Shown here piece after piece: positions 2,799 through 57,891 of a stretch of 64,000 nucleotides of DNA. The stretch spans positions 124,001 through 188,000 of the IMG/VR virus record IMGVR_UViG_3300032562_000004, one strand, 5' to 3'. The first letter of the stretch is position 1. Each line of letters begins with the position of its first letter. The notes below the pieces were generated by a model that searched no databases, was not told where the DNA came from, and worked only from the letters and a program-made list of their open reading frames with translations. Made by a program: the position numbers and the translations under genes.

Positions 2799-3688
2799 TA
2801 TCTGATATCCTTTGATAACAATAATCCATTCCAAGTTGTTCCAGAATCATATGTAAAAAACGCTAATATATCTCTACCTGAAGCGGTTAATGTTGGTGCG
2901 GTTTGTGCTGACCATTTGGTATTTGCCATCCAAAAAATTGTATTTGAGCCTCCGTTAGTCAAGTCAAGAATAAAGCTTCCAACAATTCCTGCAGGTGGAA
3001 CATTTGCAACAACAAAAGACGTATTTGAATTTATAGTTTTTGAAAAATAATTTCCTAATGAAATATCAATAGTATTTGCTGAAACTGTAGATTTAACTTC
3101 TTTTAAAGATGTTACTGTAATTGAGCTTGCAACAATATTTGCAGAAGTTGTAATATTATTAGCTAAAGTAAATGCTGCATTTGAAAATGTAAATAATTCT
3201 GTTCCATTAACATACACTCCTGCGGCAGTTACATTTCCTGTTGTTATAATACTTTCAGTAGTATTAACAGAAATGTTAGTAATATTTACATTCTCAATAG
3301 TGGTGTTACCTGTAACAATTAATGTACCATTAATACGAACATTACCTGAAACTGTGCCGCCAGTATAAACAAATGTATTTCCTACATTAGCGGTATTATA
3401 TGCCGCATTGGCTTGATTGAAAGCTGCATTGGCTTGATTGAAAGCTGCACCAGAAATTGTATTGGCAAAATTGTATGCCGCTTGAGCCGTTGTTAATGCC
3501 GATTGTGCAACATTAAGAGAAGTATTGGCTTGAGCAAAAGCCAGATTAGCCTGTATAAATTCTGGATCTAAAATAGGCACAGAAACATATAACGTTCCCG
3601 CAACATTAGAACTACCAACCACACCGCCAGTTTGACCGGCCACGGAAGATATTACTGCTGGATCTAAAGGTAAATTAAAATTAATCAT
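2798..3688 (-). CDS. Tail fibre-like protein with C-terminal adaptor-like domain
   Basis: AAFNQAN repeats, GGTVSGN fibre-like segments, C-terminal WSAQTAPTLTASGRDILAFFTYD. Confidence 0.6.
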   Translation of the reverse strand: MINFNLPLDPAVISSVAGQTGGVVGSSNVAGTLYVSVPILDPEFIQANLAFAQANTSLNVAQSALTTAQAAYNFANTISGAAFNQANAAFNQANAAYNTANVGNTFVYTGGTVSGNVRINGTLIVTGNTTIENVNITNISVNTTESIITTGNVTAAGVYVNGTELFTFSNAAFTLANNITTSANIVASSITVTSLKEVKSTVSANTIDISLGNYFSKTINSNTSFVVANVPPAGIVGSFILDLTNGGSNTIFWMANTKWSAQTAPTLTASGRDILAFFTYDSGTTWNGLLLSKDIR

Positions 3689-11310: not shown

Positions 11311-11895
11311 ATGGCCGGTACCATTAATGATTTTTTAGCCAGTTTTACCACAGATATTGCCAGACCGAATAGGTTTGATGTAACTATTCCTGTACCACTT
11401 TCTCTGGCAAACTATATCACTAGTGCCAGAAATTTAACTTTCCGTTGTGATACAGCGGTATTACCTGGTCGTTCATTTGAAACGGCAGATAAAAAAATGG
11501 GTTCGGCACCAATCGAAAAGTTTCCATACCATACAAATTATCAAGAAGCAACACTTACATTCATTCTATCTGATGATATGAATGAAAAGATTTTCTTTGA
11601 TGCTTGGATGGAATTAATGAATCCATCAACAACATATAACTTTCAGTATAAATCAAATTATGCTGTTGATATTAGTATTAATCAGTATGATGTGAAGAAC
11701 AATTTAACTTATGCTGGTTTATTACAAGAAGCATTTCCAATTGATGTGAACCAATTGGACTTAGATTGGGCGGCCGATGGTCACCATAAACTGGCGGTAG
11801 TATTTGCTTATCGTCAATGGAGCAATAATTCTGTTAGTTCACTTATTGAGAATCTTAAAACAGGTCTTATTTCTGGTTTGATTAATTCGATTTAA
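11311..11895 (+). CDS. Tail tube initiator / tail tube family protein (gp54/gp19-like)
   Basis: ARPNRFDV...[12 protein letters not shown]...KFPY...LTF..SDDM.EK.FF.AW. Confidence 0.8.
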
Positions 11896-12511
11896 TTGAA
11901 TTTCTTTTGTAATTTCTATATGTGGATGCACAAGACCTACCACAACATATACGATTTAAGTATTTTGGACTAGTAAAATCTTTATTACAGATTAAACAAT
12001 TTTTAACTAAACTACTACCATTTTCAATAAACCTTTGCTTGTGTTGTTTTTTTGTTTCTTCAGACCAAATACATTTTATTCCGGTATGAGATTTCGACAT
12101 TTTTAATATAGTTTCATCTTTATGCTTTTTGTTTTTCATACCATGTTGCCGGCCATGTTTATACTTTACACCCAAAAGAGATTTTCTTATTTTATCTTTA
12201 TGTTCTTGAGATTTTGGCTTATTGTTACCTGGAGCACCATCACCACCGTCAGTTTTATTTCTTAATATTCCAGTACCTAAATCTATTCTTCCATACCATT
12301 TAATCATTTTTCGTTCTAAAGCCAAAGCACCAATTTCTGTTAATTTTGATTCTATAATAACCACTCTATTTTTGTTTTTGGGTGGATAAACTTCACCTTT
12401 ACCTTTACAGTAAGCTCTATTATTTTTTCCTTTGCCAAAATAATAAGGCGATCCGTCTGGTCGTAGATAAGCATAGACATAAAAGACCAATTGGGGTATA
12501 TAAATAGACAT
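11882..12511 (-). CDS. GIY-YIG homing endonuclease with NUMOD3 motifs, inverted relative to neighbours
   Basis: [19 protein letters not shown]...[26 protein letters not shown]. Confidence 0.85.
12499..12506 (+). promoter_or_regulatory. T4-type late promoter TATAAATA upstream of gp26
   Basis: Exact TATAAATA about 100 nt upstream of the gp26 ATG. Confidence 0.65.
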
Positions 12512-12579
12512 AAGCTGGCATTCCTTTACAATGTTAGAGTGTGTGCGGAGGCCAATCCGGCGACATACACTTATTTATA
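12512..12579 (-). promoter_or_regulatory. Late promoter plus 36-nt structured leader of the GIY-YIG gene (copy 1)
   Basis: TATAAATA then AGTGTATGT-CGC-CGGA-TTGGCC-TCCG-C-ACACACTCT. Confidence 0.75.
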
Positions 12580-12602
12580 ATAATTTAATAGTTGAGGACA
12601 TA

Positions 12603-13325
12603 ATGTTACCAAAGATTGATGCACCAGTATATGAATTAGATTTACCTTTATCGAAGAAACATATTCGTTTTCGTCCTTTTTTAGTAAAAGAACAGAAGAA
12701 TTTGATGATGGCATTAGAATCTGATGATAGAGAAACAATTGAAAGAAATATCCGTCAGGTTCTAACTAACTGTACCTTGACCGACAATATTGATGTTGAT
12801 AAGTTACCAGTAATTGATGTTGAGTTTTACTTTATTAACTTACGAGCAAGGTCTGTAGGTGAGGTAGTAGAAAACGAATACATCTGTACCAATGAAGTTG
12901 ATGGTAAAGCCTGTAATAATAAAATGAAAGGCACATTAAACTTATTGGACATTAAAGTTGATGTTGATCCTGATAGAAAAGATACGATTAAAGTAACCGA
13001 TAAGATTTCTATCAAGATGAAATATCCAGAGTTCTCTTTGGTTGATAAGTTAAGTAAGAAAGAATCGGCTGTTGATATTGCTTTTGAAGTAATGGCAGAA
13101 AGTGTTGAATGGATTTTTGATGGTGAACAATATTACTATGCTAATGAAACACCTAAAGAAGAACTCATGCAGTTTATTGAATCTTTGAATCAAGAACAGT
13201 TTGGCAAGTTGGAAGAATTCTTTAGTAATCTTCCAACAATGCACAGAACAATGGAAATGAAATGCGGTAAATGTGGTTTTGAGCATCGTATTGATATGGA
13301 AGGCCTCGAAAGTTTTTTCGGGTAA
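12603..13325 (+). CDS. gp26: Baseplate hub assembly protein gp26 (start at MLPKID)
   Basis: MLPKIDAPVYELDLP.SKK.IRFRPFLVKEQKNL; C-terminal CGKCG...GLESFF. Confidence 0.9.
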   Translation: MLPKIDAPVYELDLPLSKKHIRFRPFLVKEQKNLMMALESDDRETIERNIRQVLTNCTLTDNIDVDKLPVIDVEFYFINLRARSVGEVVENEYICTNEVDGKACNNKMKGTLNLLDIKVDVDPDRKDTIKVTDKISIKMKYPEFSLVDKLSKKESAVDIAFEVMAESVEWIFDGEQYYYANETPKEELMQFIESLNQEQFGKLEEFFSNLPTMHRTMEMKCGKCGFEHRIDMEGLESFFG

Positions 13326-13516: not shown

Positions 13517-15181
13517 ATGGATGATAAAAATAATTCGGATTGGAAAAAGGAATGGAAGGATTCAGGATTAGATCCTGATAAACCTGAAGATTTTAAAAAA
13601 ATCCAAAGCATTTACGCCAAGAAAATGGAAACAAAAATTCTTGGAGGGTTGGAAAATAGCCCAGCACAAACCGTTTCAAACATAATCAACAAACTTCATG
13701 GAATTGATAAACAAAAACCATTGGTTGAAGGTAAAGATTATACTATTGCACCTGGTGGTGAAGATGTTGAATTGAGTCAAGAATTTATTGATTCGATGAG
13801 AAAAAGGTCAAAAGAACTCACTAAGACCAAAGGTATGGAAAATATGTTGGGTAACCCAATTATGTCTTCCGTATTTAAAAAGAATCCAAAAAGAAATCAA
13901 AAAAATTCAAAACCGGAAGTAGCAGCTGATACTTCAGTAAATGAAGATAAAGAAAAACTTGCTCCTAAAAAAGATCCATTAATTAACCATGTTGCACCTG
14001 CTTCTGAATCCAAACTAAAGGCAGGAGATTCTGAAGGTGATATTCTAGGTAAAATCTTTAATTTGATGGTAGAAAAATACCACAGAGATGATGCTAATTT
14101 TAAAGAAGAAACCAAATATAAAGAAAAACTCAAAGAAAAAAAAGAAACTCGTTCAAAAGAGTTAATTGATTTATTTACACCAGGTAAAAAGAAACCAGGT
14201 AAAAGAAAGAAAAAAGAAAAAGAAGGTACTGCCGAAAAAGTAGAACCTAAAACTACTGGTACAACTAAAGGTGGAACAACATCAGCAGTAAGAGATACCA
14301 CCAATTCAGTTGTTTCGACTGGAACTAAAGCTGTAGTGGGTGTTGCAGCTGCAGGTGCTGCGGTAGTTGGTGTTGATGCTTTGGCCGCCAAGATAACTAA
14401 AAATGAAGGCGGTGGAAATCCAAATCAAGCAAACATTGTAAAGGGACATTCAGCAAAAGAAGCACAAATTATCAAAGGTAATATAGATGTTACTACAGGT
14501 AAAACTTTTGATAAATCATTAGAAGAAATGACCTTAGGTGAAGCTTATGATTTGGGAACTAGAAGAGGTAAATATTATAATGCTAAAGGTGCTGGTGCCG
14601 CATTAGGTAAGTATGGTTTTATGCCTATTGCGATTGAAGATAGAGGTAGAGCACTTTATGGAAAAGATTGGAGAAATGTTCCGTTTGATTCAAAAACTCA
14701 GGATGAATTAAACAAGTCACTAATTATAACCAATTTACAAAAATTACAAAAAGCAGGAATACCACCATCTGAAAGAAATTTATATTTGATGCACTTTTTT
14801 GGTAATACTGCACAAACTTCAGCATTTTTAAATTCTTCAGATGAAAGTAGTATGGCGCCCATTCTAGATATGTACAATCATGGCGCTACTGCAAATCCGG
14901 ATGTTGCCAAGTTAACTGTTGGCCAATATAAAAAAAGGTTTTTGGCTAAATTTGATGATACTCCCGCTGACTTACAAGTAAAATCAGTAGCACAACCAGT
15001 ATCAAATCCACCTACAACAATTCCAAGTAAAATTCCAGATGGACAATCTTCAAGTGCACCATCTACAACAATAATAAGTAAAACTACCAATGTAATTAAA
15101 GGTGGTACTACATATAGTATAACGGAAGATAATTCTCCTGATACTTCTCCATTAATCGACAGACAATATAATTTAAGATAA
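13517..15181 (+). CDS. Hub/tape-measure-region protein with a lysozyme-like domain
   Basis: ITKNEGGG...EMTLGEA...AALGKYGFMP...FD.KTQDEL segment resembles muramidase AAGKYQF motifs. Confidence 0.55.
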   Translation: MDDKNNSDWKKEWKDSGLDPDKPEDFKKIQSIYAKKMETKILGGLENSPAQTVSNIINKLHGIDKQKPLVEGKDYTIAPGGEDVELSQEFIDSMRKRSKELTKTKGMENMLGNPIMSSVFKKNPKRNQKNSKPEVAADTSVNEDKEKLAPKKDPLINHVAPASESKLKAGDSEGDILGKIFNLMVEKYHRDDANFKEETKYKEKLKEKKETRSKELIDLFTPGKKKPGKRKKKEKEGTAEKVEPKTTGTTKGGTTSAVRDTTNSVVSTGTKAVVGVAAAGAAVVGVDALAAKITKNEGGGNPNQANIVKGHSAKEAQIIKGNIDVTTGKTFDKSLEEMTLGEAYDLGTRRGKYYNAKGAGAALGKYGFMPIAIEDRGRALYGKDWRNVPFDSKTQDELNKSLIITNLQKLQKAGIPPSERNLYLMHFFGNTAQTSAFLNSSDESSMAPILDMYNHGATANPDVAKLTVGQYKKRFLAKFDDTPADLQVKSVAQPVSNPPTTIPSKIPDGQSSSAPSTTIISKTTNVIKGGTTYSITEDNSPDTSPLIDRQYNLR

Positions 15182-15183
15182 AC

Positions 15184-16635
15184 ATGGACTATCAAAAAGC
15201 CAGACAGGTCAGAAAAAAGAGCCTATTATCACTCATCACACAACAAAAGTTTGGTGAGGGTAAAAGTCTTGGTGCATCCGTTAGAGGTGCAGTTTCACAA
15301 AAGTTTCAAGCCAAAGCCAAAGGTATTAAAGAAAGCCTTGATCCATTAAATTGGGTTAGAAAAGCCACAGGTAAAGGTGCTTTCGGTGACTTTGCTGTTA
15401 CTGGTTTAGGTAGAATGTTTGGTCGTTCTGATAAAGATATCAAAGCTTTTGGTGGTATTGGTAGAAAAAAATTAAGAGGCAAAAAAGATCCACAGTTTAC
15501 TACTATTGCTGCAGGTCCACTTAAACCATTAAAACGTGGTGATGGTGTTGCTGATGTTTTGGCCAAGATGTATAACTTCATGATGCAAAATGAAGAAATG
15601 CACAAACTGAACTTAGAGATTGATAAAGCTTTCAAACAAGAAGAAATGGATGAGGACGACCGCAGACATGAAGAATTAGTCAAAACAATTAAGAAGTATA
15701 TGAAAGTGTCAAAATCTTCTACAGGTAAAGTAAGAGATGTTGGTGGTGGAGGTTTCTTTGATGGTATAATTGATATGGTTAAAGGATTAATTGGGAAAGC
15801 AATTGACGCACTGAAATTTTTAATTGCTCCATTATTAACATTTGTTTCTTCGATAGGCGCAATGGCACTTGAGGCGTTAGGAACTTTAGCTGCATTTCTT
15901 ATTACTCCAGCAGGCGTTGCATTTTTAGGACTTATTGCTGCTGGTACAATTGCTGCATGGATTGCTAAAATGATTGCTGCTGATCCCCAGGCAGCATTAG
16001 CAGGTAAAGGTCCTGTAGGTACAGCTGTTGCAGGACCTGGTGCTGAAACTCAATTGCCTTCTTCGGAAGAAGAACAAGCAAATAAATCTTTGGCCAACAA
16101 AGCAAAAGCAGTGGACAAAAAAGGCATCAAAAAGGCATCATTAGAAGAATTGGAGGCCAAACAACAATTGCTAATTGAAACTGGCGATCCAAGATACAGA
16201 GTAAAAAAAGGTCAAGGTGATGAATCTGATAAACTCAAAGCAAAACAACTTGATGATATAGAATCAGAAATTACTGCAAGAAAATCAAAACAAACTTCAC
16301 AAGCACCAAACAATAAAACAGAAACACCTACTGCTGTTCCAGTAAAATCAGCTTCATCTGAACCCACGCCAGAAAAAACGGATGTGTCTGTGCCTACGGC
16401 CGCAACCGAAACACCTAAAGTACAACCCGTACAACAGTCAGCCAATCCTCCTGTGCCTGTAGCTGCACCAAGCCAAGCATCAACAGGTGGTGATACTCAA
16501 CCAATCGTTTCTGTAAACAGTAGTACTAATACTATTGGTGATAAATCTCCACCTAAGATTGTACAAACAAATACGGCAAGAGCAAGAAATGGCGACCTTA
16601 ACCGATACTTAATGAATATTGCGGGTGTTGTTTAA
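15184..16635 (+). CDS. Tape-measure/gp29-like protein
   Basis: Charged helical N-terminus, hydrophobic central helices, low-complexity P/T/S tail; follows gp26/51. Confidence 0.5.
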   Translation: MDYQKARQVRKKSLLSLITQQKFGEGKSLGASVRGAVSQKFQAKAKGIKESLDPLNWVRKATGKGAFGDFAVTGLGRMFGRSDKDIKAFGGIGRKKLRGKKDPQFTTIAAGPLKPLKRGDGVADVLAKMYNFMMQNEEMHKLNLEIDKAFKQEEMDEDDRRHEELVKTIKKYMKVSKSSTGKVRDVGGGGFFDGIIDMVKGLIGKAIDALKFLIAPLLTFVSSIGAMALEALGTLAAFLITPAGVAFLGLIAAGTIAAWIAKMIAADPQAALAGKGPVGTAVAGPGAETQLPSSEEEQANKSLANKAKAVDKKGIKKASLEELEAKQQLLIETGDPRYRVKKGQGDESDKLKAKQLDDIESEITARKSKQTSQAPNNKTETPTAVPVKSASSEPTPEKTDVSVPTAATETPKVQPVQQSANPPVPVAAPSQASTGGDTQPIVSVNSSTNTIGDKSPPKIVQTNTARARNGDLNRYLMNIAGVV

Positions 16636-19003: not shown

Positions 19004-19534
19004 TCAAATATTCTTCGCTTTATAAAATATGTGGTGACCAATTTGTGTAACTCGTTGTAAGTTCCAACCTGGATTCACCTGTGTGTTATGATAGTATAAC
19101 GCATTTGTTCTCGCTATTGTATCATGAACATCTGGTTCCGTCAAGGCCTTTCTTGCAACCATTTCAGATTCATCGTAGGCATATTTGTTTCTTACCAACA
19201 TATTTTTCATACAAGTCCATGAAAACTGGCATACCACCAACTTATTAACATAACTACGTTGGTATACCACTTCACATACTGTACCACCAAACTTTGGATC
19301 GTTTGCACGATTGATTGTTACCTGTGCTACTGCCAATTTACCTTCATAAGATTCTGTTGCAGCTTCAAAATAAACATTATCTGCGAGGCATTTTAATTGT
19401 TTATTGAAATCTTCACTCACTTGTTGTTCTACTACCATTTGAGTAACCTCTTGTGAAATAGATGGGAATGAATATGCCAATAAAGCACAACTTAACAACA
19501 ATAATATAGCTTTTGATTTTGATGCGAACATCAT
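19004..19534 (-). CDS. SleB/CwlJ-type cell wall hydrolase
   Basis: CLADNVYFEA...GKLAVAQV..NR...CEVVYQ...CQFSW...LYYH...IGHHIFY. Confidence 0.9.
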   Translation of the reverse strand: MMFASKSKAILLLLSCALLAYSFPSISQEVTQMVVEQQVSEDFNKQLKCLADNVYFEAATESYEGKLAVAQVTINRANDPKFGGTVCEVVYQRSYVNKLVVCQFSWTCMKNMLVRNKYAYDESEMVARKALTEPDVHDTIARTNALYYHNTQVNPGWNLQRVTQIGHHIFYKAKNI

Positions 19535-20105: not shown

Positions 20106-20768
20106 TTATGCTTTGGCAACATTTTTTTGGTAATAATCAATCGCTTTCACCAATCCAGGTATGTGGTCATCGGTTTTCTGCTGAAATACCAATGGTGCTT
20201 CATTCTCTACCGCCATGATAATTACCAGATTATCAATTGGTGTACCAATCATTTCTTCATACATCAAAGCATATGCGGATGTTTGCCAAAAGTAATCTTC
20301 AATGTGTGCCATTTCTTTTATTTTCTTTGATGTTTTAAAGTCAATAACAGATAATACACCATCAAATTCACCAATACAATCCACACGACCTGCCATGCCT
20401 AATTGTTTAGACCATAATGCACATTCTTGATAATGAATATTGTTGATACGATTTAATTCTGGCTTAATTGATTGGAACATCTCCAACGCATCAGGCATGA
20501 TTGTGCCTAACTTCTCATTGTTTAGATATCTCTCGCACAAGGTGTGTACATTGGTGCCACGACCTGTTGCTTGTTTAGAGATTCTATTGGCTTCTGCTTC
20601 ACCAACTCTCTTACGCCATTTCATGATACCCTCTTTCTTTTGGGCGCCAATCACAGTAGTAACAGACGGCAATTTAGAACCATCAGGTAGAGTATAGTAC
20701 CTCATACCATCAGGAAAGGTTTCAGATTTTAAATCAATGAGGTCTTTTGGTGGGCAAAAAGTAAACAT
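20106..20768 (-). CDS. PD-(D/E)xK (Cas4/RecB-like) exonuclease
   Basis: PSVTTVIG...GRGTNVH...AGRVDCIGEFDGVLSVIDFKTS. Confidence 0.85.
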   Translation of the reverse strand: MFTFCPPKDLIDLKSETFPDGMRYYTLPDGSKLPSVTTVIGAQKKEGIMKWRKRVGEAEANRISKQATGRGTNVHTLCERYLNNEKLGTIMPDALEMFQSIKPELNRINNIHYQECALWSKQLGMAGRVDCIGEFDGVLSVIDFKTSKKIKEMAHIEDYFWQTSAYALMYEEMIGTPIDNLVIIMAVENEAPLVFQQKTDDHIPGLVKAIDYYQKNVAKA

Positions 20769-21544
20769 TATTTTTTATTTCTATAATTATCTAATTCAGC
20801 TTCAAACTTAGCTGCTTGTTCAGGAGTAATAACAGTAGCATCAATTCGTTTTCTCAACTCATCAGCATAATTCTGTAATTGTGTAATATCACCCTCATAG
20901 TGAAAATTCTTTGTAACATGTTTTGTATCATAGGCATCAATTAATAGATTATATCTATCAGTATCTCCATCATTTCTAATTTGATGCCATTTATTTACCC
21001 ATAAGATGTAAGCAGAACCATCAGCAGGCATATGTAGATTTTCACCTTCACAAATGAATACACATTTTGGATTTGTCCATAACGGAATATGAATTCGTGC
21101 CATGTATTCTTGTTCAGGTCCATCAGAATGTACCACAGATTTTGAACCAGCTTTTAGATTAGTAATTCTAGCACGCCTGGTGTAGAAACCCAATTCATCC
21201 AATTGGTCTAATACTTTCTTAATTTCACCGACACAACCTTGTGTTGGGTTTTTATATTCTAATGAATGTGCAATATCCAAATATTTTAGTGTTTCATAGT
21301 TATTGGCACCTTTGGGAAAGAATACTTCTTCTAATGTAGTACCTTCTTCATTCTGAAAGAAAGCAAACCCATCACGCCAATCACCAGTACGACTTTGTAA
21401 ACTGTAACCACCAAATCCATTATATTGTGGGGTTTCATATTCTTTACCTTGAATACATTCTCCACCCAATGTAAATACACTACGTTTAACTTCTTCTCTT
21501 AACTTTTCAATGTCGACTTTGAAATCTAATTTTTCATAGAACAT
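20768..21544 (-). CDS. Asp/Asn beta-hydroxylase-like 2OG-Fe(II) oxygenase
   Basis: RARITNL.AG....HSD...RIHIPLWTN...WHQIRNDG.TDRYNLLID. Confidence 0.8.
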   Translation of the reverse strand: MFYEKLDFKVDIEKLREEVKRSVFTLGGECIQGKEYETPQYNGFGGYSLQSRTGDWRDGFAFFQNEEGTTLEEVFFPKGANNYETLKYLDIAHSLEYKNPTQGCVGEIKKVLDQLDELGFYTRRARITNLKAGSKSVVHSDGPEQEYMARIHIPLWTNPKCVFICEGENLHMPADGSAYILWVNKWHQIRNDGDTDRYNLLIDAYDTKHVTKNFHYEGDITQLQNYADELRKRIDATVITPEQAAKFEAELDNYRNKK

Positions 21545-22128
21545 TATAATACACCTTTCAACATTTCAATGGTACTCTTATCAAATGTACCCAAATTGGA
21601 AGTTAATGATATTCTTGGTTGATTAGACCTGTTTTGTTCTACACTATGTAATACAAAACCTGGAAAGAATACTAACTTACTTTCTTTAGCTTTAATACGA
21701 TTAAACTTAGAACCATTCACACCATCGTTACCTGAATCCCAATCACAACCATTTCTAGGATCAATTAATAACAGGTCACCACAATTCTCAGGTGCTTGTA
21801 TATAATAAGTCATAGCAATCTTTGGTCCACCGTGTCCGTGTATGGCCATAGATTCACCTGGATTATTATAATTTACCCAACCTCTGTTGTGCCAATATTC
21901 AAAACCATCAACATAGTTGTGTGCCACATAATCATAAGTTTGTTCTTTGATTACCTTTAATGTATATTCTCTAAGTTCATTTAACCTTTTAGAATCGTTT
22001 GTCCAAACATTTGATGTTGGTTTGAATGATGTAATTTCATTCCACAATTCAATATTAAATTGTCTATCAAAATCAGTTTGTATCTCCCAAACAGGAGTAA
22101 CCCACATATCAGTTTTGTTTATAATCAT
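21544..22128 (-). CDS. 2OG-Fe(II) oxygenase (TIGR02466-like)
   Basis: GWVNYNNPGE....HGH...YYIQAP...LVFFPGFVLHSV...RISL. Confidence 0.82.
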   Translation of the reverse strand: MIINKTDMWVTPVWEIQTDFDRQFNIELWNEITSFKPTSNVWTNDSKRLNELREYTLKVIKEQTYDYVAHNYVDGFEYWHNRGWVNYNNPGESMAIHGHGGPKIAMTYYIQAPENCGDLLLIDPRNGCDWDSGNDGVNGSKFNRIKAKESKLVFFPGFVLHSVEQNRSNQPRISLTSNLGTFDKSTIEMLKGVL

Positions 22129-22667
22129 AAATGACCAGTTTCTTTCAACATATCACACACAGCAGCATAATCATAAGTTGCTGTAGCCAGAGTAATTGCT
22201 ACTCTATTTTTAATTCCTGATAATGGTGTAACTGAATGAGGTTTTGTTACATCTAAAATGTATACATCACCTGGTTCAGCAATGTAGTTACCATTAATCA
22301 ATAAATCTTCTTTATCATAAATGAAACCGTGTCCTGTTTGGTTCTCGATTCTGTGTTTCTTTGGGTCATCATTCTTAAATGTAAAGAACTCTGTTACACA
22401 ATTATCCGTTTCGACATAAAAGTTAATTGTTACCAAATCACAATCAGTATGTGGTGGTATTACTGTATTAATCTCCATCAATGATACACAGAACATATTA
22501 CGATATCGTTCAGGAATATATTCTATCACAGATTTATAATCTTGGCAATCCACATTAAGATATTTGATACCTTTGAACTCACCATCTACCACTTCACCGA
22601 ATGTTACTTGTTCAGTCAATGGTTTGTAACCAGTAATTGTGAATGGTTTATTTAATTTTTGGAACAT
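22125..22667 (-). CDS. 2OG-Fe(II) oxygenase-like protein
   Basis: IPPHTD (HxD) and LDVTKPHSV (distal His). Confidence 0.65.
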   Translation of the reverse strand: MFQKLNKPFTITGYKPLTEQVTFGEVVDGEFKGIKYLNVDCQDYKSVIEYIPERYRNMFCVSLMEINTVIPPHTDCDLVTINFYVETDNCVTEFFTFKNDDPKKHRIENQTGHGFIYDKEDLLINGNYIAEPGDVYILDVTKPHSVTPLSGIKNRVAITLATATYDYAAVCDMLKETGHL

Positions 22668-23322
22668 ATTCTTTAATCTTCACTAAATCATTTACCCAAC
22701 TCTTTAACACCACAGCATTAGGACTATCTTTCTCAATTTTCAATTTCATATCGGTAGATAATGAGATTCTTAAATCATTAGACTTGTTCTCTTGTACCTC
22801 ATGCATCAGATAGGCAGGAAAGAATACCAATTGGCCTGCCTTTGGTGTTATTGTTTTAATCTTTGCTGTTGGATTCTCCGTGGTGTATTCACCATCAACA
22901 ATAACAAGTTCACTAGTATCAATGAATGATATATCACCAGAGCTCTCTGGCACTTTAATATAATAAGTTGCCGCAAGTGCTGCATCAGAGTGTGCATGCA
23001 TCTCAATACGTTGACCAGGTTCTTTTACATTGACCCAACCAAATAGAAATTCAAATTGAATCTCCAATCCTTCTACTTCTCTTGCCTCACGAACATAATC
23101 GTTAGCATTCTCTACTACTAATTTGTGTATTGTTCTTTTGAGTTTTTGTATGTGTGGTAAATCGTAGTCCCATAAATCATCTTTGGGACTACTATCTACA
23201 CCAGTTTGAATATTTTTTGCTATTAGATAGATTTCATCCAGTAGTCTGTCGTTAAACTCTGAATCTAAATCTGTTGTTACTTCCCATATTGGTGATTTCC
23301 ACCATGTATTCACTTGAACCAT
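22648..23322 (-). CDS. 2OG-Fe(II) oxygenase (TIGR02466-like)
   Basis: GWVNVKEPGQ....HAH...YYIKVP...LVFFPAYLMHEV...RISL. Confidence 0.82.
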   Translation of the reverse strand: MVQVNTWWKSPIWEVTTDLDSEFNDRLLDEIYLIAKNIQTGVDSSPKDDLWDYDLPHIQKLKRTIHKLVVENANDYVREAREVEGLEIQFEFLFGWVNVKEPGQRIEMHAHSDAALAATYYIKVPESSGDISFIDTSELVIVDGEYTTENPTAKIKTITPKAGQLVFFPAYLMHEVQENKSNDLRISLSTDMKLKIEKDSPNAVVLKSWVNDLVKIKEYVPKIK

Positions 23323-23332
23323 TTTGTAAGGT

Positions 23333-23650
23333 TTACAGTCCTTTTTTTAACTTCCATGCTTCATATTGTTGTACAATTTCACACTTATGATTCCAATCAA
23401 TACCATCATGTGAGTTTAATTTGGCTGTATGGTACTCATCACCATATACAATATGTTCTAAAATAGGAATGCCATCATGAAAGATTGCTTCTAAGATATC
23501 AGCATAATCATGTAACATCTGAAACATTCTATCTTTTTTATCTTCAGGCAGGTTCAACATATCTGCACCCATCTGATTATCAAAATAATAGATTACATGC
23601 TGACGATATAGTTCAGTATCTTCTATTGTGATTTGATTGGTACCAGGCAT
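23333..23650 (-). CDS. Hypothetical acidic protein in the rSAM cluster
   Basis: Tiled in the operon. Confidence 0.5.
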   Translation of the reverse strand: MPGTNQITIEDTELYRQHVIYYFDNQMGADMLNLPEDKKDRMFQMLHDYADILEAIFHDGIPILEHIVYGDEYHTAKLNSHDGIDWNHKCEIVQQYEAWKLKKGL

Positions 23651-24519
23651 TTTAATTTTCCTTTAAAACTATTTAATTTTGTAATTGTAGATGCTGTGTA
23701 ATAACTAAAGAACAAGAAGAACCAAATAGTATATACTGTTGGTAATCCATGTTTACGTTTTGATTTAGCGATTCTTGGAATCATATCAACAACACGGCAG
23801 ATAGGACGGCCAATATTCATTAGAATACGACCCATGAAATTATCACGTTCAACAGCACCCATTAAGTATGCCATGTGTTGTGACCATGGTTGACCAATCT
23901 TGTTAGCCATATCAATCATGGCTTTCTGTTGTGCCTTCTGGCGTTCTTCTTTATTCTTAATCCACACCATGAAATCAGGACCTTTGCCTTCCATCCATGC
24001 TGTTACGATACGAGCCCAACGAATATAACCACGATATACCGATTTATCTGTTTTGCGTAACATCTGACCATAGGCTTGGTCGGCTGCCCATATATTGTGG
24101 CTCATCATACCAAGGTCAAACAGTTTAGCACAAACAATCTTAGAACAGTTACAAGCACAGTTACAATTATATGATGTTTGGCCTGTGGTACAGTTATAGG
24201 TACAAGCACAGTTGCAATTATTTTGTAACCAAGATTGTGAATCACAGTTGGTACAATTTACTGTACCTGAAATATAGCAGTTGTTGCATTGGATGTTACC
24301 ACAGTTACAATTGGATGTACAGTTACTATTGTTACAATTTCCTTGAGTGGTATTTTGAAAATAAGTCAAACCTTTAAACGAATTCATGTTTGGTGATGAT
24401 GGACTAATTGATGGCAAAACATAACCATTGAGAAAATTCAATGAAGAACTATACGTTGTGCCAATACCCAATTCGTTATTAACATCACTAACTGCAATTT
24501 GTCCTGTAGGTGTGGTCAT
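23623..24519 (-). CDS. Cys/Asn-rich repeat protein, candidate substrate of the adjacent radical SAM enzyme
   Basis: Virion-like N-terminus TPTGQIAVSDVNNELG; about 17 Cys in about 70 aa (NCNC repeats); C-terminal KIVCAKL...GYIRWA domain. Confidence 0.6.
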   Translation of the reverse strand: MTTPTGQIAVSDVNNELGIGTTYSSSLNFLNGYVLPSISPSSPNMNSFKGLTYFQNTTQGNCNNSNCTSNCNCGNIQCNNCYISGTVNCTNCDSQSWLQNNCNCACTYNCTTGQTSYNCNCACNCSKIVCAKLFDLGMMSHNIWAADQAYGQMLRKTDKSVYRGYIRWARIVTAWMEGKGPDFMVWIKNKEERQKAQQKAMIDMANKIGQPWSQHMAYLMGAVERDNFMGRILMNIGRPICRVVDMIPRIAKSKRKHGLPTVYTIWFFLFFSYYTASTITKLNSFKGKLKCLVPIKSQ

Positions 24520-24530
24520 TTATTTACTCT

Positions 24531-26000
24531 TTAAACGTTGATTTCAGTATTTATATCGTCAGCCAACCGTGATTTACCATATACTTCCACACCATCCAAT
24601 TCGCCAATTTTTTCACTAACCACCTTGATTGGAATAATCTTTTTGACTGGTTTCTCTTTATGTTCAAAGATAGTACCAAAGATATCTTGGCGTTCCAATG
24701 GTAACTCATCATTTTTAATGAGTGTTGGAATATAACCAGTCATTCGTTCTAATGCCACAGCAAACAATGCCACATTATCTGAATAAGAATTGGCACAGGA
24801 GATGTCCCAAAACTTCTTATCCAAGAACATACAGGCACCTTTACAGAGGTGTAATACTGGACAAGAACCACATTCTTTACGATTACTCCAATGCGTGGAG
24901 GTCTTAATCTCTACATTGTCCATATCAGTCATGTGGCCACCAAGATGAGACTCTCCATTCTTGGAGATTTCAAGGGAACTGACATTCTGGCAGGTCATTA
25001 CATTACCTCGTAAATCAACCGCCAATACATGTTCGTCATCCATACCACATTTCTGACCTAGGTACTTAGAATTGGCATGAGATAATACTGCTTGAGTAAA
25101 TCCATCAATCTTACCTAATTGGCCAACAAAACCAATTTGACCACCTGTGCTAAAGAAGTCAGCAAAGGCCGTTCTGCGATACTCAAAATGTTCTTGTAGT
25201 GTCTGTAATGAATTGGTAATACCTTCCTCATCATACGCATCAACAATACCACCTTCACCTAATTTAACATTAGGATCACCAGTCATATTAACAAACCATT
25301 CATAAATTTCTTTACGAGATTTATTTTTACTATTCATCATTGGATTGAATGAGATACCTTTTTTCAACCTACTCATCATACGATAGAAGCCAAGAATAAC
25401 TTTCTTCTTTTCTGGATCATCAAAAGGATCAGGACCACGAACAGATTGTCCAGGTCCATCGTGTGAGATTGATACAGAAAAATTATACTTCATCAACCAA
25501 TCACAAATTTCATCTGTAAGAATAGAACCATTGGTGATGATAGAAAATTGTGGTAGACGATTCCAATGTTGGAACTTATCTACGATTGCCTCAGTCAAAG
25601 GCTTTAATGTTTTCCAATAAACGAGTGGTTCACCACCCCACAATTCAATCTTCAAACCTTTTTGTTCATCAAATTCTAGAGTATCAAACATCTCCATAAA
25701 AGCATCAATATCTTTTTTGGAAGTTTCTGGCGCTCGTTCAACAAACTTCTGTGAACAGTAATCGCAAGAGTAATTACAACTCAAACCTAATTGAATTTTA
25801 AGTAATTGTACTTCTTTGGATTTTTTTAGTGGACGGTCTTTGTCGAATGATTTATATTCAGTCAACTGTTGATTGTGAATTGTGCCTTCAGGAAATTCAT
25901 ACACGATTCCATCTTCACTTTTGAGTGTGTTGGTTTCATTATCATAGTAGAAGATTTTTTTATCATCAGCACTACGTTCAGCATGTATTTCAAATAGCAT
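24531..26000 (-). CDS. Radical SAM/SPASM protein (anSME-like)
   Basis: CNYSCDYC, WGGEPL, SPASM Cys pattern KCG...CQNV...CGSCPVLHLCKGAC...C. Confidence 0.9.
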   Translation of the reverse strand: MLFEIHAERSADDKKIFYYDNETNTLKSEDGIVYEFPEGTIHNQQLTEYKSFDKDRPLKKSKEVQLLKIQLGLSCNYSCDYCSQKFVERAPETSKKDIDAFMEMFDTLEFDEQKGLKIELWGGEPLVYWKTLKPLTEAIVDKFQHWNRLPQFSIITNGSILTDEICDWLMKYNFSVSISHDGPGQSVRGPDPFDDPEKKKVILGFYRMMSRLKKGISFNPMMNSKNKSRKEIYEWFVNMTGDPNVKLGEGGIVDAYDEEGITNSLQTLQEHFEYRRTAFADFFSTGGQIGFVGQLGKIDGFTQAVLSHANSKYLGQKCGMDDEHVLAVDLRGNVMTCQNVSSLEISKNGESHLGGHMTDMDNVEIKTSTHWSNRKECGSCPVLHLCKGACMFLDKKFWDISCANSYSDNVALFAVALERMTGYIPTLIKNDELPLERQDIFGTIFEHKEKPVKKIIPIKVVSEKIGELDGVEVYGKSRLADDINTEINV

Positions 26001-28033: not shown

Positions 28034-28672
28034 ATGTCAAGTATATATCAACCAAATCTACCATATTGTGTATATCTTACCACATATTTTGGTAACAAAC
28101 TTCCTATGTTTTATCTTGGATCTTCATCGGTTAAGAAGGTACAAAATGGTTATAAAGGTTCAGTATCTTCTAAAAAATACAAACAAATATGGAAAGAAGA
28201 ACTAAAACAAAATCCACAATTATTCAAAACACAAATTATATCGTATTATACAACAAGAATTGAAGCTACTGAAAAAGAAAATCAATTTCAACTTAAATTG
28301 AATGTAGTTAAATCTCCATTGTATATGAACACATCAAATGCAATACCAAATGGCATTTATGGTGTATCAATGAAAGGTGAAAATAATCCTATGTTTGGTA
28401 AAACCAGAAGTATGGCCACCGAAACCAAAATCAAAATAAGCCAAACCAAAAAAGGTGTTGTAAAATCGGAACAAACAAAACAAAAAATGAGAAAACCTAA
28501 ACCGATCGGTTTTAGTGAAAAACTAAAGGGCAATCAAAATGCAAAAGGTGCAAAATCTTGGTTAGGTAAAACTCATAGTGAAGAAACCAAAAAGAAAATC
28601 TCAGATAAAATCAAAGAATTAAACCGGTTAAAAAATCAAGGCTTATCACAATCAGGAACTCTAATTAAATAG
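28034..28672 (+). CDS. GIY-YIG homing endonuclease with NUMOD3 motifs, inverted
   Basis: YCVYLTTY......FYLGSS....GYKGS; ENNPMFGK, GKTHSEETKKKIS. Confidence 0.82.
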   Translation: MSSIYQPNLPYCVYLTTYFGNKLPMFYLGSSSVKKVQNGYKGSVSSKKYKQIWKEELKQNPQLFKTQIISYYTTRIEATEKENQFQLKLNVVKSPLYMNTSNAIPNGIYGVSMKGENNPMFGKTRSMATETKIKISQTKKGVVKSEQTKQKMRKPKPIGFSEKLKGNQNAKGAKSWLGKTHSEETKKKISDKIKELNRLKNQGLSQSGTLIK

Positions 28673-33779: not shown

Positions 33780-34973
33780 CTACACTTGAGGTTGGTTGGC
33801 AACCTCGGAAGTGGTAGCAATGGTACTCGTATTCGCTGGTGATTCTACTGATGCATCCACTTTTGAATACAAATCTAAAAATGCCATTTTGGTTTCTTCG
33901 TCAAAACGATTCACACACAATGTAATGGCCTTCATTCTATCTTTAAAGATACCAAATGCTTTGGCAATATGTACCAATCGGCGAGTAGAGATAATCTCGT
34001 CAGTAGCACCTTCTTGGTATGATTTACGAACCACATCAGCCCATTGGCAAAGATTCTCAACAAAATCTTTATCATCAAGCAATGGTCCTAAAATCTTTTT
34101 CTCGGTCTTAGCATCAGGGAATTCCTGCTCTACCGTAATCGGGAATCTTTCCAAAAATGCATCATCTAATATCTGTGATAGATATTTGCCTTCATCACTA
34201 CCACGACCTTTGGTATTTGCCGTTGCAATGATATTAAATCCATCTTTTGGATAAACCATTTCACCAGATTTCTTATTGTAATGTGGTTTGCCTTCCATGA
34301 TGCCTTGCAAACACATCAACTTATTAGAACCACGGTCTACTTCGTCAATCAACAATACTGCGCCACGCTTCATAGCAATAAGCACAGGACCATCACGATT
34401 GACCACATTACCATTCACCAATGTAGGACCGCCAAGTAGGTCACTCTCATCAGTTTCGACAGAGATATTCACACGGATACATTCACGATTCAACTCCGCA
34501 CACACCTGTTCGACCATCAAGGTCTTGCCGTTGCCTGATAGACCAGTAACAAATATCGGATAGAATGATTTGCTACCAATGATATTCTTCATATCTTTAT
34601 AGAAACCAAATGGCACATAATCAGGCCATTTCTGTGGTACAGCAGGTTCAGAATCATCTACCAGTTTTGGTTGACGGAACTCCAACACTTGTGCTGGTTG
34701 TGCATATGCCATTTCAGTTTCGGGTTCAATAACTTTACAATCAGCATCGTTTAACTTTACAATACTTTCTTTTAACTTTACAATCTTTTCACCTGATGGT
34801 GGCACTTTGTATTGACCACGGTCATAACGATATTGTGATTTTGTAACCAGCCAATATGGGTATGGTGCATCTGATTCATTACACACTTTGGTAATATCAT
34901 CACGATTCAAAATTGGTTCTGAACCAAAGATTGATTCAGCTGCTACAATAAATTGCTTTGCATTTTTATTCAT
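33780..34973 (-). CDS. MoxR/CbbQ/CobS-like AAA+ ATPase
   Basis: GLSGNGKT Walker A, LLIDEVDR, ATANTKG, AFLERF. Confidence 0.88.
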   Translation of the reverse strand: MNKNAKQFIVAAESIFGSEPILNRDDITKVCNESDAPYPYWLVTKSQYRYDRGQYKVPPSGEKIVKLKESIVKLNDADCKVIEPETEMAYAQPAQVLEFRQPKLVDDSEPAVPQKWPDYVPFGFYKDMKNIIGSKSFYPIFVTGLSGNGKTLMVEQVCAELNRECIRVNISVETDESDLLGGPTLVNGNVVNRDGPVLIAMKRGAVLLIDEVDRGSNKLMCLQGIMEGKPHYNKKSGEMVYPKDGFNIIATANTKGRGSDEGKYLSQILDDAFLERFPITVEQEFPDAKTEKKILGPLLDDKDFVENLCQWADVVRKSYQEGATDEIISTRRLVHIAKAFGIFKDRMKAITLCVNRFDEETKMAFLDLYSKVDASVESPANTSTIATTSEVANQPQV

Positions 34974-56184: not shown

Positions 56185-56546
56185 CTTACTTCACTCCTGC
56201 CATCGCCAACATCGCGACTTTTAACTACTCGCGGCGACATTGCTTCGTATTGTTCTGCTGTTTCTAATACTACATTACGACATACTGCGGTAAACCAACG
56301 ATCAATAATATCTGCGTCTGTATCTTTAGGATCCATCATATAGCCATGGCGAACCAAATCGGCAATCATTTTGTCATTCCAATCAAATTCAAATGCGCCT
56401 GAATTAATATCGTTAGGATCTATGTCCATACTTAATACTTCAAAGTATGCTTCGCCTTTTTCAGTAGCAACTTGTTTAGCTGACTTAGCTTGTTGTTGCG
56501 CTACAGCCGCAATTGGCTTCTTTTTAAAAAAATCAAATATTCCCAT
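56181..56546 (-). CDS. Hypothetical phage protein
   Basis: GAFEFDWNDK...WFTAVCRNV. Confidence 0.6.
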   Translation of the reverse strand: MGIFDFFKKKPIAAVAQQQAKSAKQVATEKGEAYFEVLSMDIDPNDINSGAFEFDWNDKMIADLVRHGYMMDPKDTDADIIDRWFTAVCRNVVLETAEQYEAMSPRVVKSRDVGDGRSEVS

Positions 56547-57649: not shown

Positions 57650-57891
57650 TAATTTCCTTTTAATTTCCATATAAGATGTTCGGTACTGCTATGCCATTTG
57701 TATTGATACGCTGGTTCGCCTGGCCCGGACCATCCAGCTACGCCACGATAGGCATATTCTAGCCAGATTAACTTATTACTTAGCGCACATTTATGGGGTA
57801 GCCAAGAAAATTTGAGTTCCCAAAATGCCTTTCTATAAAAAGGATCGATTAAATCAGGTATAGGCATACCATGAAATCCTTGTGGATACAA
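57649..57891 (-). CDS. Hypothetical protein
   Basis: Tiled; FSWLPHKC. Confidence 0.45.
   Translation of the reverse strand: MYPQGFHGMPIPDLIDPFYRKAFWELKFSWLPHKCALSNKLIWLEYAYRGVAGWSGPGEPAYQYKWHSSTEHLIWKLKGN

What the first reader, a model, noticed from the sequence alone, without database searches (positions are those of the whole stretch)
20768..26000. Radical SAM/SPASM enzyme, Cys/Asn-rich protein and four 2OG-Fe(II) oxygenases: RiPP-like modification cluster
The SPASM enzyme lies directly upstream of a protein with about 17 Cys in about 70 aa (NCNC, CxxxC), followed by four tandem oxygenases including an Asp/Asn beta-hydroxylase-like one. SPASM enzymes of ranthipeptide and sactipeptide systems make Cys thioether links on adjacent Cys-rich substrates (established). 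Here the substrate has a virion-like N-terminus, so the cluster may cross-link and hydroxylate a structural protein (inference). An Fe-scavenging or metal-binding role is an alternative.
Basis: partly seen in the sequence, partly recalled or inferred. Interest (0 to 1): 0.75.

Follow-up and report, generated by a model that had tools for sequence, protein, structure and literature searches.

The report
Radical SAM enzyme paired with Cys-Asn-repeat phage fibre protein
A large T4-like phage carries a radical SAM/SPASM enzyme next to a late-expressed protein with a Cys-Asn repeat, and the same pairing turns up in many unrelated phages on the tips of tail-fibre proteins, which points to an undescribed enzymatic modification (probably cross-linking) of phage fibres.

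Summary
All genes lie on the minus strand:
- a 489-aa radical SAM/SPASM enzyme (24531-26000);
- a 298-aa protein with 17 Cys and 18 Asn in residues 60-130 (23623-24519);
- a 105-aa ORF;
- four cupin/2OG-Fe(II) oxygenases, one of them Asp/Asn-hydroxylase-like.

The pairing is far more general than this phage.
- In about 50 non-redundant relatives the order rSAM, Cys-rich protein, ox2, AspH-like is kept.
- A scan of viral contigs for NCNCxCNC found 56 unrelated loci with the motif at the extreme C-terminus of an ORF. Sampled examples are tail-fibre or collagen-like proteins.
- 41 of these loci hold a homologous rSAM on the same strand. The other 15 are cut off too early to judge.
- About 150 non-coding or internal occurrences of the motif gave none.
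- In other phages the repeat is followed by a self-cleaving S74 or Hint domain, so it would become the mature C-terminus.
- A T4-type late-promoter motif lies 28 nt before the Cys-rich gene and is conserved in orthologues.

Best reading: the rSAM modifies the (Asn-Cys)n module of a fibre-like virion protein, probably through thioether cross-links, and at least some oxygenases act with it. The chemistry is untested. I found no published description in the searchable library.

The parts
24531..26000 (-). Radical SAM/SPASM enzyme (489 aa), predicted maturase of the neighbouring Cys-Asn-repeat protein
   Evidence: Pfam PF04055 above cutoff. NCBIfam best hits are PapB, QhpD and other peptide maturases, all far below their equivalog cutoffs. 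Across 42 family members C75/C79/C82, GGE122-124, C377, C380, C386 and C402 are invariant, and C318, C337 and C390 are kept in at least 90%; together they give C318-x13-G-x4-C337 and C377xxC380x5C386x3C390 plus C402. 294 clusters at 50% identity match at E<1e-30.
24548..24555 (-). T4-type late-promoter motif TATAAATA, 28 nt upstream of the Cys-rich gene's ATG (inside the 3' end of the rSAM gene)
   Evidence: One of only 5 matches in the window. Two others precede baseplate genes. TATAAATA lies 23-33 nt before the start in 25 of 58 distinct orthologues, and NATAAATA occurs within 80 nt upstream in 40 of 58, against a background of 0.007 per 80 nt.
24346..24519 (-). Cys-rich protein, N-terminal conserved domain (aa 1-58)
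   Evidence: Conserved in all orthologues, including short forms that lack the C-terminal domain. No family hit. No paralogue in the 235.8-kb genome.
24130..24342 (-). Cys/Asn-repeat core (aa 60-130): 17 Cys, 18 Asn; ends in YNCNCACNCSKIVC
   Evidence: The residue before Cys is N 77%, A 9%, Q 7.5%, D 4% across orthologues. AF2 pLDDT is below 50 here. This is the only NCNCxCNC site in the whole genome.
23623..24129 (-). C-terminal all-helical domain with a hydrophobic last helix (aa 131-298); accessory module, possibly a membrane anchor or a removed chaperone
   Evidence: AF2 pLDDT 84-91, helices 129-290, last helix 259-290. The same domain ends a Gly-rich protein next to fibre genes in Synechococcus phage SynMITS9220M01 and a DUF4815 phage protein. 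In orthologues it is replaced by Peptidase_S74 or by nothing.
23333..23650 (-). Conserved 105-aa ORF, overlaps the end of the Cys-rich gene by 28 nt; function unknown
   Evidence: Found in 31 of 51 non-redundant related loci by tblastn. No family or atlas lead.
22648..23322 (-). 2OG-Fe(II) oxygenase ox1 (PF13759 / TIGR02466 / phrog_81)
   Evidence: Homologues of this family sit directly upstream of the rSAM in unrelated fibre-linked loci.
22125..22667 (-). Cupin/JmjC-like oxygenase ox2 (no Pfam hit)
   Evidence: Invariant H73, D75, H144, R155. AF2 pLDDT 94.7. Foldseek top hits are MINA53, NO66, YcfD and cysteine dioxygenase, TM 0.4-0.49. Present in 49 of 51 related loci.
21544..22128 (-). 2OG-Fe(II) oxygenase ox3 (PF13759), paralogue of ox1
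   Evidence: hhalign of ox1 against ox3 gives 100% probability. Present in only 10 of 51 related loci.
20768..21544 (-). Asp/Asn beta-hydroxylase-like oxygenase (PF05118)
   Evidence: Present in 49 of 51 related loci, always together with ox2.
20106..20768 (-). PD-(D/E)XK exonuclease; conserved downstream neighbour, probably not part of the system
   Evidence: phrog_298 exonuclease at 7e-76. Marks the distal boundary of the block in most relatives.

Best explanation
The rSAM/SPASM enzyme and the Cys/Asn-rich protein form an enzyme-substrate pair. They belong to a widespread, undescribed phage system.

Proposed mechanism:
1. A SPASM radical SAM enzyme modifies an (Asn-Cys)n module that lies at the mature C-terminus of fibre-type virion proteins.
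2. By analogy with QhpD, PapB and NxxcB, the most likely chemistry is radical formation of thioether bridges from Cys sulfur to a side-chain carbon of Asn (or of Ala, Gln or Asp at the same position). This would give a rigid, covalently stapled knot or ladder.
3. In this T4-like phage the substrate is a dedicated late protein with three parts: an N-terminal attachment-type domain, the repeat core, and a helical, probably membrane-anchoring or removable C-terminal domain.
4. The co-conserved cupin oxygenases (ox2 and the AspH-like enzyme, plus PF13759-type enzymes) probably hydroxylate residues of the same core.

Shown by the data: gene content, motif, co-occurrence, fibre context, late-promoter motif.
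Inferred: that the enzyme acts on this protein, the type of bond, virion incorporation, and the role of the oxygenases.
For: 1. Synteny in the T4-like clade. Of 51 non-redundant related loci with at least 6 kb downstream of the rSAM, 49 keep Cys-rich, ox2 and AspH-like genes downstream. The rSAM is 64-98% identical and the substrate only 37-95%, yet the substrate always has 13-28 Cys.

2. Co-occurrence outside the clade, starting from the motif. Of 56 viral loci with NCNCxCNC within 12 aa of the stop of an ORF of at least 90 aa, 41 have a family rSAM (HMM E<1e-20). By tblastn all 43 rSAM hits in such loci are on the same strand, 36 of them with the motif ORF upstream. The other 15 loci have less than 2.5 kb of downstream sequence. 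Internal-motif ORFs gave 0 of 6, and 37 of 40 short-frame hits had none. Fisher p = 2e-9. In bacterial genomes, 0 of 116 non-C-terminal hits had the rSAM, while the Polynucleobacter and Limnohabitans MAG hits with C-terminal motifs did.

3. Co-occurrence starting from the enzyme. Homologues at 31-46% identity (JWF, RSP15, P0144, P0172, P0254, P0199) all have an upstream protein ending in a CxC-type tail wherever upstream sequence exists.

4. Fibre nature. PHROG tail-fibre hits for six sampled proteins, collagen repeats and Mtd_N, and the position after J-like central-fibre genes.

5. The repeat abuts self-cleaving domains. Peptidase_S74 follows it in the T4-like orthologues L079 and L139. A Hint domain follows it in JWF gp028 and in a Rhodospirillales MAG.

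6. A conserved T4 late-promoter motif precedes the gene.

7. Enzyme class. The SPASM motif is complete. The best named matches are thioether-forming maturases: PapB, QhpD, SCIFF and CcpM. The closest solved structures are 8vpo and 5wgg.

8. [quoted passage not shown] These are the same four residues that precede Cys here, and (NC)n contains overlapping NxxC motifs.

9. PF13759-type oxygenases homologous to ox1 and ox3 lie next to the rSAM in about 18 unrelated fibre loci.

10. Tree. The T4-like rSAMs form one well-supported group (100/99) inside a family whose other members all accompany C-terminal-tail substrates.
Against: - There is no biochemical evidence, and the complex prediction gave no answer.
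- The rSAM scores far below every curated maturase cutoff, so the reaction type cannot be transferred by homology.
- In this phage the cluster lies in the replication/auxiliary region next to gp32 and gp59, not in the structural module.
- The N-terminal domain matches no known virion protein.
- The C-terminal hydrophobic helix could mean a membrane protein rather than a virion part.
- Radical SAM enzymes are oxygen-sensitive whereas 2OG oxygenases need O2, so concerted action needs explanation.
- Tandem dioxygenases are common in cyanophage-type genomes without this rSAM (PMC2938197). ox1 and ox3 vary in presence and order.
- AspH-like and ox2 homologues were not found outside the T4-like clade.
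Confidence: 0.55

Rival explanations
1. The Cys/Asn-rich module is a metal-binding or Fe-S-binding element. It would be metallothionein-like, or an axial metal site of a trimeric fibre like the HxH iron sites of T4 gp37. The rSAM would not cross-link it; at most it would help load or use the metal.
For: High Cys density with CxC spacing. Alternating residues in a beta-strand would put all Cys on one face. Fibre tips of other phages bind metals (own knowledge). AF2 cannot fold the core as a monomer.
Against: The strict coupling to one rSAM/SPASM family across distant phages is what is expected of an enzyme-substrate pair, not of a plain metal site. The residue before Cys is strongly constrained to N, A, Q or D, which metal binding does not explain. 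No metal chaperone genes were seen in the annotated neighbourhoods.
Confidence: 0.12
2. The cluster is a true RiPP-like auxiliary pathway. Its product is released, or acts inside the cell as a toxin, bacteriocin, signal or host-takeover factor, and is not a virion component. The helical C-terminal domain would serve as a membrane anchor or export part.
For: The location is among auxiliary and early-type genes. There is a C-terminal hydrophobic helix. Some phages have tandem small (about 100 aa) repeat-tailed ORFs resembling multi-copy precursors (L177 and L181). Fatty-acid desaturase genes are inserted in the same spot in relatives, which marks an auxiliary-gene hot spot.
Against: The late-promoter motif is conserved. 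Orthologues carry a tail-fibre-type S74 chaperone. In non-T4 phages the sampled motif-bearing ORFs are tail-fibre or collagen-like proteins within tail modules. No protease or transporter was recognised.
Confidence: 0.15
3. The rSAM does act on the repeat but performs other chemistry. Candidates are Cys to formylglycine (anSME-like), epimerisation, C-methylation, or C-C or C-O cross-links.
For: SPASM enzymes catalyse all of these (own knowledge; PMC9389541, PMC8326336). The anaerobic sulfatase maturase model also matches over the full length (TIGR03942), and JWF gp030 was annotated that way.
Against: No sulfatase and no C/S-x-P-x-R motif is present in the core as printed. The substrate is dominated by Cys, which is the donor in all thioether-forming SPASM systems. 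The best model matches are thioether synthases.
Confidence: 0.13
4. The four oxygenases are a generic cyanophage-type dioxygenase array placed here by descent, and they do not act on the Cys-rich protein.
For: Cyanophages carry up to 10 tandem dioxygenases without this rSAM (PMC2938197). The presence and order of ox1 and ox3 vary. AspH-like and ox2 were not found in non-T4 loci. The oxygen requirements of the two enzyme types conflict.
Against: ox2 and AspH-like occur in 49 of 49 loci that carry the long-form substrate. PF13759-type homologues lie directly between fibre gene and rSAM in about 18 unrelated loci. Genes overlap or abut, which suggests co-translation.
Confidence: 0.4

Closest known systems
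QhpD/QhpC (quinohemoprotein amine dehydrogenase maturation)
   Same: A SPASM radical SAM enzyme that installs several Cys-to-Asp/Glu thioether bridges in a folded protein subunit rather than in a leader-bearing peptide. It is the second-best NCBIfam match (TIGR03906).
   Different: The score of 70 bits is far below the 453-bit cutoff. There is no dehydrogenase context. The substrate here is an (Asn-Cys)n repeat on phage fibre-type proteins.
Ranthipeptide maturases PapB (freyrasin) and NxxcB
   Same: SPASM enzymes that make beta-thioethers from Cys to Asp (PapB) or to Asn (NxxcB), with repeated short motifs in the substrate. PapB is the best NCBIfam match, aligned over residues 65-392. The acceptor tolerance of NxxcB (N, A, Q, D; PMC9389541) equals the residues found before Cys here.
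   Different: 83.5 bits against a cutoff of 340. The substrates are 100-600-aa proteins, not short precursors. No RRE, protease or exporter was recognised. The context is phage structural genes.
SCIFF/CteB and other Cys-rich peptide maturases (CcpM, CefB)
   Same: An rSAM/SPASM enzyme adjacent to a Cys-rich substrate. 5wgg (CteB, identification from my own memory) is the second-closest solved structure.
   Different: Different Cys spacing, small peptides, bacterial operons.
Tail-fibre C-terminal maturation modules (Peptidase_S74 intramolecular chaperone; Hint domains)
   Same: In orthologues and in JWF the repeat is directly followed by these self-cleaving domains, as in endosialidase-type fibres.
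   Different: The window's protein has a different, all-helical C-terminal domain with a hydrophobic end. No enzyme-made cross-link is known for such fibres.
Cyanophage tandem dioxygenase arrays (Iyer et al. 2010, PMC2938197)
   Same: Several 2OG/JmjC-type oxygenases in tandem in T4-like cyanophage-type genomes. That paper also noted operons that combine a beta-hydroxylase-family gene with tail-collar and collagen-like proteins.
   Different: No radical SAM or Cys-repeat partner was described there.

Membership tests
Radical SAM superfamily | CxxxCxxC cluster motif and SAM-binding GGE motif | tested here: met
   C75, C79, C82 and G122-G123-E124 are invariant in 42 homologues. PF04055 scores 36.3 bits against a 29.5 cutoff.
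SPASM subfamily | C-terminal 7-Cys motif Cx9-15Gx4C ... CxxCx5Cx3C ... C for two auxiliary clusters | tested here: met
   C318-x13-G332-x4-C337; C377-xx-C380-x5-C386-x3-C390; C402. All are invariant or kept in at least 90% of members.
PapB-family ranthipeptide maturase (NF047865) | Score above the curated equivalog cutoff (340 bits) | tested here: not met
   83.5 bits.
QhpD (TIGR03906) | Score above cutoff (453 bits) and a qhp operon context | tested here: not met
   70.2 bits, N-terminal half only. No qhp genes nearby.
Anaerobic sulfatase maturase (TIGR03942) | Score above cutoff (349 bits) and a sulfatase substrate with C/S-x-P/A-x-R | tested here: not met
   49.8 bits. No sulfatase among the annotated ORFs of the cluster and its flanks, and no such motif in the core as printed.
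Classical RiPP cluster | Short precursor with leader and core, a recognition element (RRE) on the enzyme, and a leader protease or exporter | tested here: not met
   The substrate is 298 aa here and 100-620 aa elsewhere. No PqqD/RRE, protease or transporter family hit was found in the cluster. Possible self-cleaving S74 or Hint domains lie C-terminal to the core instead.
2OG-Fe(II)/JmjC oxygenases | Double-stranded beta-helix fold with an HxD/E...H iron triad and a basic 2OG-binding residue | tested here: met
   ox1, ox3 and AspH-like are above their Pfam cutoffs. ox2 has invariant H73, D75, H144 and R155 and a cupin fold.
Phage tail fibre with Peptidase_S74 chaperone | C-terminal PF13884 domain | tested here: not met
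   The window protein has none. Its orthologues L079 and L139 do (29.1 and 22.4 bits against a cutoff of 22).
Virion structural protein of this phage | Presence in purified particles | not testable with these tools
   Indirect evidence only: the late-promoter motif and the fibre context of homologous systems.
Metallothionein-like metal binder | Stoichiometric metal bound by free Cys thiolates | not testable with these tools
   Only composition is known.

The most novel reading that the evidence does not exclude
Phages from several unrelated lineages use RiPP-type radical SAM chemistry to build part of the virion. A SPASM enzyme would staple the C-terminal (Asn-Cys)n tails of trimeric fibres, possibly between chains, into a thioether ladder or knot at the fibre tip. 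2OG oxygenases would add hydroxyl groups. This would be a new class of enzymatic covalent cross-link in virus particles and a new ranthipeptide-like motif.
Probability: 0.35. Interest if true: 0.9.

Novelty: new variant of a known kind. Interest (0 to 1): 0.8.

Why it matters
If true, it extends radical SAM peptide-maturase chemistry from small secreted natural products to virion proteins. It also defines a simple and very recognisable new substrate motif, (Asn-Cys)n at a mature C-terminus. The enzyme family is large: about 300 clusters at 50% identity.

It would bear on the function of at least some of the long-puzzling oxygenase genes of cyanophage-type genomes. It would add a new way of hardening or shaping receptor-binding fibres.

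The system is directly testable in cultured phages (Achromobacter phage JWF, Ralstonia phage RSP15) and by co-expression in E. coli.

Tried and rejected
- Near-identical DNA search of the cluster in the phage collection found no match.
- Pfam, PHROGs and NCBIfam gave nothing for the Cys-rich protein or the 105-aa ORF.
- Foldseek on the Cys-rich model matched only uncharacterised C-terminal domains, so no function could be assigned.
- ESM Atlas searches for the C-terminal domain, the M1 partner and the 105-aa ORF all scored below useful levels.
- Complex prediction of the rSAM with residues 1-135 of the substrate gave 'no answer'. It is not evidence either way.
- By eye I guessed that RSP15 ORF046 is AspH-like. 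hhalign did not support this (probability 0.3%). It belongs to a separate unknown family, M3.
- I found no paralogues of either end of the Cys-rich protein in the phage's own genome.
- Six literature searches found no description of the pairing.
- The anSME reading was rejected. It was the annotation given to JWF gp030. The model score is low and there is no sulfatase motif.

Full report
**What is there.** The window is part of a 235.8-kb virus record that CheckV rates as complete. It is a T4-like phage. Its gp32 is about 55% identical to those of cyanomyoviruses. Baseplate and tail genes lie at 0.8-16.6 kb, and gp32 and gp59 at 16.7-18.8 kb.

From 26000 down to 20106, tightly packed or overlapping minus-strand genes encode the following:
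- a 489-aa radical SAM enzyme;
- a 298-aa Cys/Asn-rich protein;
- a 105-aa ORF;
- a PF13759 oxygenase (ox1);
- a 180-aa protein without a Pfam hit (ox2);
- a second PF13759 oxygenase (ox3);
- an Asp/Asn beta-hydroxylase-like protein (PF05118);
- a PD-(D/E)XK exonuclease.

The Cys-rich protein has 17 Cys and 18 Asn in residues 60-130. Thirteen of the 17 Cys follow an Asn. No other open frame in the window exceeds 7 Cys per 70 residues.

ox2 has invariant H73-x-D75, H144 and R155. Its confident AF2 model (pLDDT 94.7) has a cupin/JmjC-like fold, with MINA53, NO66 and YcfD as top matches.

**The enzyme.** The rSAM has the canonical CxxxCxxC (C75, C79, C82), a GGE motif and a complete SPASM signature: C318-x13-G-x4-C337, C377xxC380x5C386x3C390, and C402. 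These are conserved across 42 homologues down to 28% identity.

Its best named matches are thioether-forming maturases: PapB over residues 65-392, then QhpD, SCIFF, CcpM and others. All fall far below their curated cutoffs. It is therefore a separate family of that class. The family is large, with 294 clusters at 50% identity matching at E<1e-30. The closest solved structures are 8vpo and 5wgg.

**Co-occurrence inside the clade.** Eighty IMG/VR loci carry an rSAM that is 64-98% identical. In 51 non-redundant loci with at least 6 kb downstream, 49 have the Cys-rich gene, ox2 and the AspH-like gene downstream. ox1 is present in 42, p105 in 31 and ox3 in 10. The two exceptions have no Cys-rich gene downstream of the rSAM; in some clade members, such as L079 and L080, it lies upstream instead.

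The substrate evolves faster (37-95% identity) but always keeps 13-28 Cys. It has a conserved N-terminal domain and a core with conserved landmarks: NCxNCDxQxWLQxNCN ... YNC ... CNCxCNCSKIIC. Because these phages are related, this synteny alone could be inheritance.

**Co-occurrence outside the clade.** This is the key result.

Achromobacter phage JWF and Ralstonia phage RSP15 have rSAMs 44-46% identical, and both lie inside tail-fibre modules. JWF gp028, a tail-fibre protein, contains ...QNCNCDCNCNCS followed directly by a Hint domain. RSP15's side tail fibre ends ...NCQCGN.

I scanned IMG/VR for DNA encoding NCNC[ADENKT]CNC and received 120 loci. Eighteen belong to the T4-like clade. Among the rest:
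- 56 loci have the motif within 12 residues of the stop codon of an ORF of at least 90 aa.
- 41 of these contain a family rSAM (HMM E<1e-20).
- By tblastn, all 43 rSAM hits in such loci are on the same strand, 36 with the motif ORF upstream, at a median gap of 1.4 kb.
- The remaining 15 have less than 2.5 kb of downstream sequence, so no assessable locus lacks the rSAM.

Controls:
- Six ORFs with an internal motif gave none.
- Of 40 loci where the pattern falls in short frames, only three had the enzyme. One is an ORF cut by the contig end and two are real 71-82-aa ORFs (Fisher p = 2e-9).
- In bacterial genomes, 116 hits outside C-terminal coding positions (mostly simple repeats) gave none.
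- The C-terminal hits in Polynucleobacter and Limnohabitans MAGs did have the enzyme.

Starting instead from distant enzyme homologues (31-38% identity), every locus with upstream sequence has a small or collagen-like protein ending in a CxC-rich tail.

**What the substrates are.** The motif-bearing proteins I sampled match PHROG tail-fibre families. Several contain collagen triple-helix repeats or Mtd_N.

The usual layout is:
1. a J-like protein of about 1100 aa;
2. a protein of about 150 aa;
3. a protein of about 400-450 aa;
4. the repeat-tailed fibre of about 300 aa;
5. one or two ORFs of 200-340 aa;
6. the rSAM.

A lysis cassette follows in JWF, L216 and L217.

The intervening ORFs fall into recurrent families:
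- M1, with 23 members plus RSP15 ORF047, of unknown function;
- two groups of PF13759-type oxygenases, one clustering by blastp with ox1 and ox3 and the other matching them by hhalign at 97% probability;
- M3, which includes RSP15 ORF046;
- in some loci, a second radical SAM enzyme.

**The repeat becomes a C-terminus.** In most loci the gene simply stops after the repeat. In the T4-like orthologues L079 and L139 the repeat is followed at once by a Peptidase_S74 intramolecular chaperone. In JWF and a Rhodospirillales MAG it is followed by a Hint domain. Both domain types are self-cleaving (established knowledge), so the mature protein would again end in the repeat (inference).

The window's protein instead carries a confidently predicted all-helical domain whose last helix is hydrophobic. 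The same domain ends a Gly-rich protein beside fibre genes in a cyanophage, and also a DUF4815 phage protein.

In the rSAM tree the T4-like enzymes form one group (100/99) within a family otherwise tied to C-terminal-tail substrates. The helical-domain form is a single subgroup (100/100). The tree is rooted at the midpoint only, so I claim no direction of events.

**Timing.** TATAAATA, the T4 late-promoter consensus (own knowledge), occurs only five times in the window. Two copies precede baseplate genes. One lies 28 nt before the Cys-rich start codon. It is found 23-33 nt upstream in 25 of 58 distinct orthologues, and NATAAATA within 80 nt upstream in 40 of 58, against a background of 0.007 per 80 nt. 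This fits late expression together with virion proteins.

**Mechanism proposed.** The rSAM probably binds the repeat and makes Cys-S to side-chain-carbon bridges.

Across orthologues the residue before Cys is Asn (77%), Ala, Gln or Asp. NxxcB forms Cys-to-Asn beta-thioethers and tolerates exactly Ala, Gln and Asp as acceptor (PMC9389541). (NC)n also contains overlapping NxxC motifs. QhpD shows that SPASM enzymes can cross-link a protein subunit (own knowledge).

The oxygenases may hydroxylate Asn or Asp in the core. Support for this is the perfect co-conservation of ox2 and AspH-like with the long-form substrate, and the recurrence of PF13759 enzymes in unrelated loci. Against it stand the generic dioxygenase arrays of cyanophages (PMC2938197) and the opposite oxygen needs of the two enzyme classes.

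**Limits.**
- Nothing here shows catalysis.
- Complex prediction returned no answer.
- AF2 does not fold the core.
- The cluster lies outside the structural module in this phage.
- The N-terminal domain has no recognisable relatives.
- The literature held in the library does not describe the pairing.

I rate it a new variant of a known kind, an rSAM/SPASM enzyme with a Cys-rich substrate, with high interest.

Noticed in passing
L020:7440-8896 and L007:3886-4605: In several relatives, one or two membrane fatty-acid-desaturase genes (PF00487) are inserted between the rSAM and the Cys-rich gene. The spot behaves as an auxiliary-gene hot spot, and the pair tolerates being separated by 0.7-1.5 kb.
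   Followed up: partly
window 28034-28672 (+): An isolated plus-strand ORF in a block otherwise occupied by minus-strand genes. It has two NUMOD3 motifs (Pfam 4e-12), so it is probably a homing endonuclease.
   Followed up: partly
window 12499-12506 (+) and 12572-12579 (-): Two back-to-back TATAAATA late-promoter motifs drive divergent baseplate genes (the hub gene at 12531-13325 and the ORF at 11882-12511).
   Followed up: partly
window 57892-58746 (-), with 56546-57670, 59623-60516 and 60509-61285: A second, unrelated radical SAM enzyme (QueE-like, phrog_2076). It sits next to an unknown conserved protein, a nucleotide-sugar epimerase and a UDP-glucose dehydrogenase. This may be a DNA or sugar modification module.
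   Followed up: no
L106:7616-8473, L001:4314-5129 and 21 other loci: An uncharacterised protein family (M1, 245-412 aa) almost always follows the repeat-tailed fibre gene in non-T4 phages. It includes RSP15 ORF047. It has no Pfam or PHROG hit and is absent from the window's clade.
   Followed up: partly
L177:5385-7200 (minus strand) and L181: Three tandem ORFs of about 100 aa, each ending in NCNC(N/A)CNC, lie upstream of one rSAM. The layout resembles multi-copy RiPP precursors.
   Followed up: no
L109, L194, L213, L152, L153, L203, L211: Some loci hold two to four radical SAM genes in a row beside the repeat-tailed protein, which suggests several radical modifications.
   Followed up: no
L003:4669-6519 (Synechococcus phage SynMITS9220M01 gp028): This protein has long Gly-rich stretches, a run of about 34 prolines and a run of arginines. 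These are followed by the same helical C-terminal domain as the window's protein, and the gene lies next to fibre genes. No rSAM homologue was found in the 12.5-kb stretch fetched.
   Followed up: partly
window 33780-34973 (-) and 19004-19534 (-): A CobS-like 'porphyrin biosynthesis' ATPase (phrog_249), as annotated in other phage genomes, and a SleB-type cell-wall hydrolase (PF07486).
   Followed up: no
window 13517-16635 (+) and 765-2834 (-): Three large ORFs (554, 483 and 689 aa) in the tail region have no PHROG or Pfam hit.
   Followed up: no
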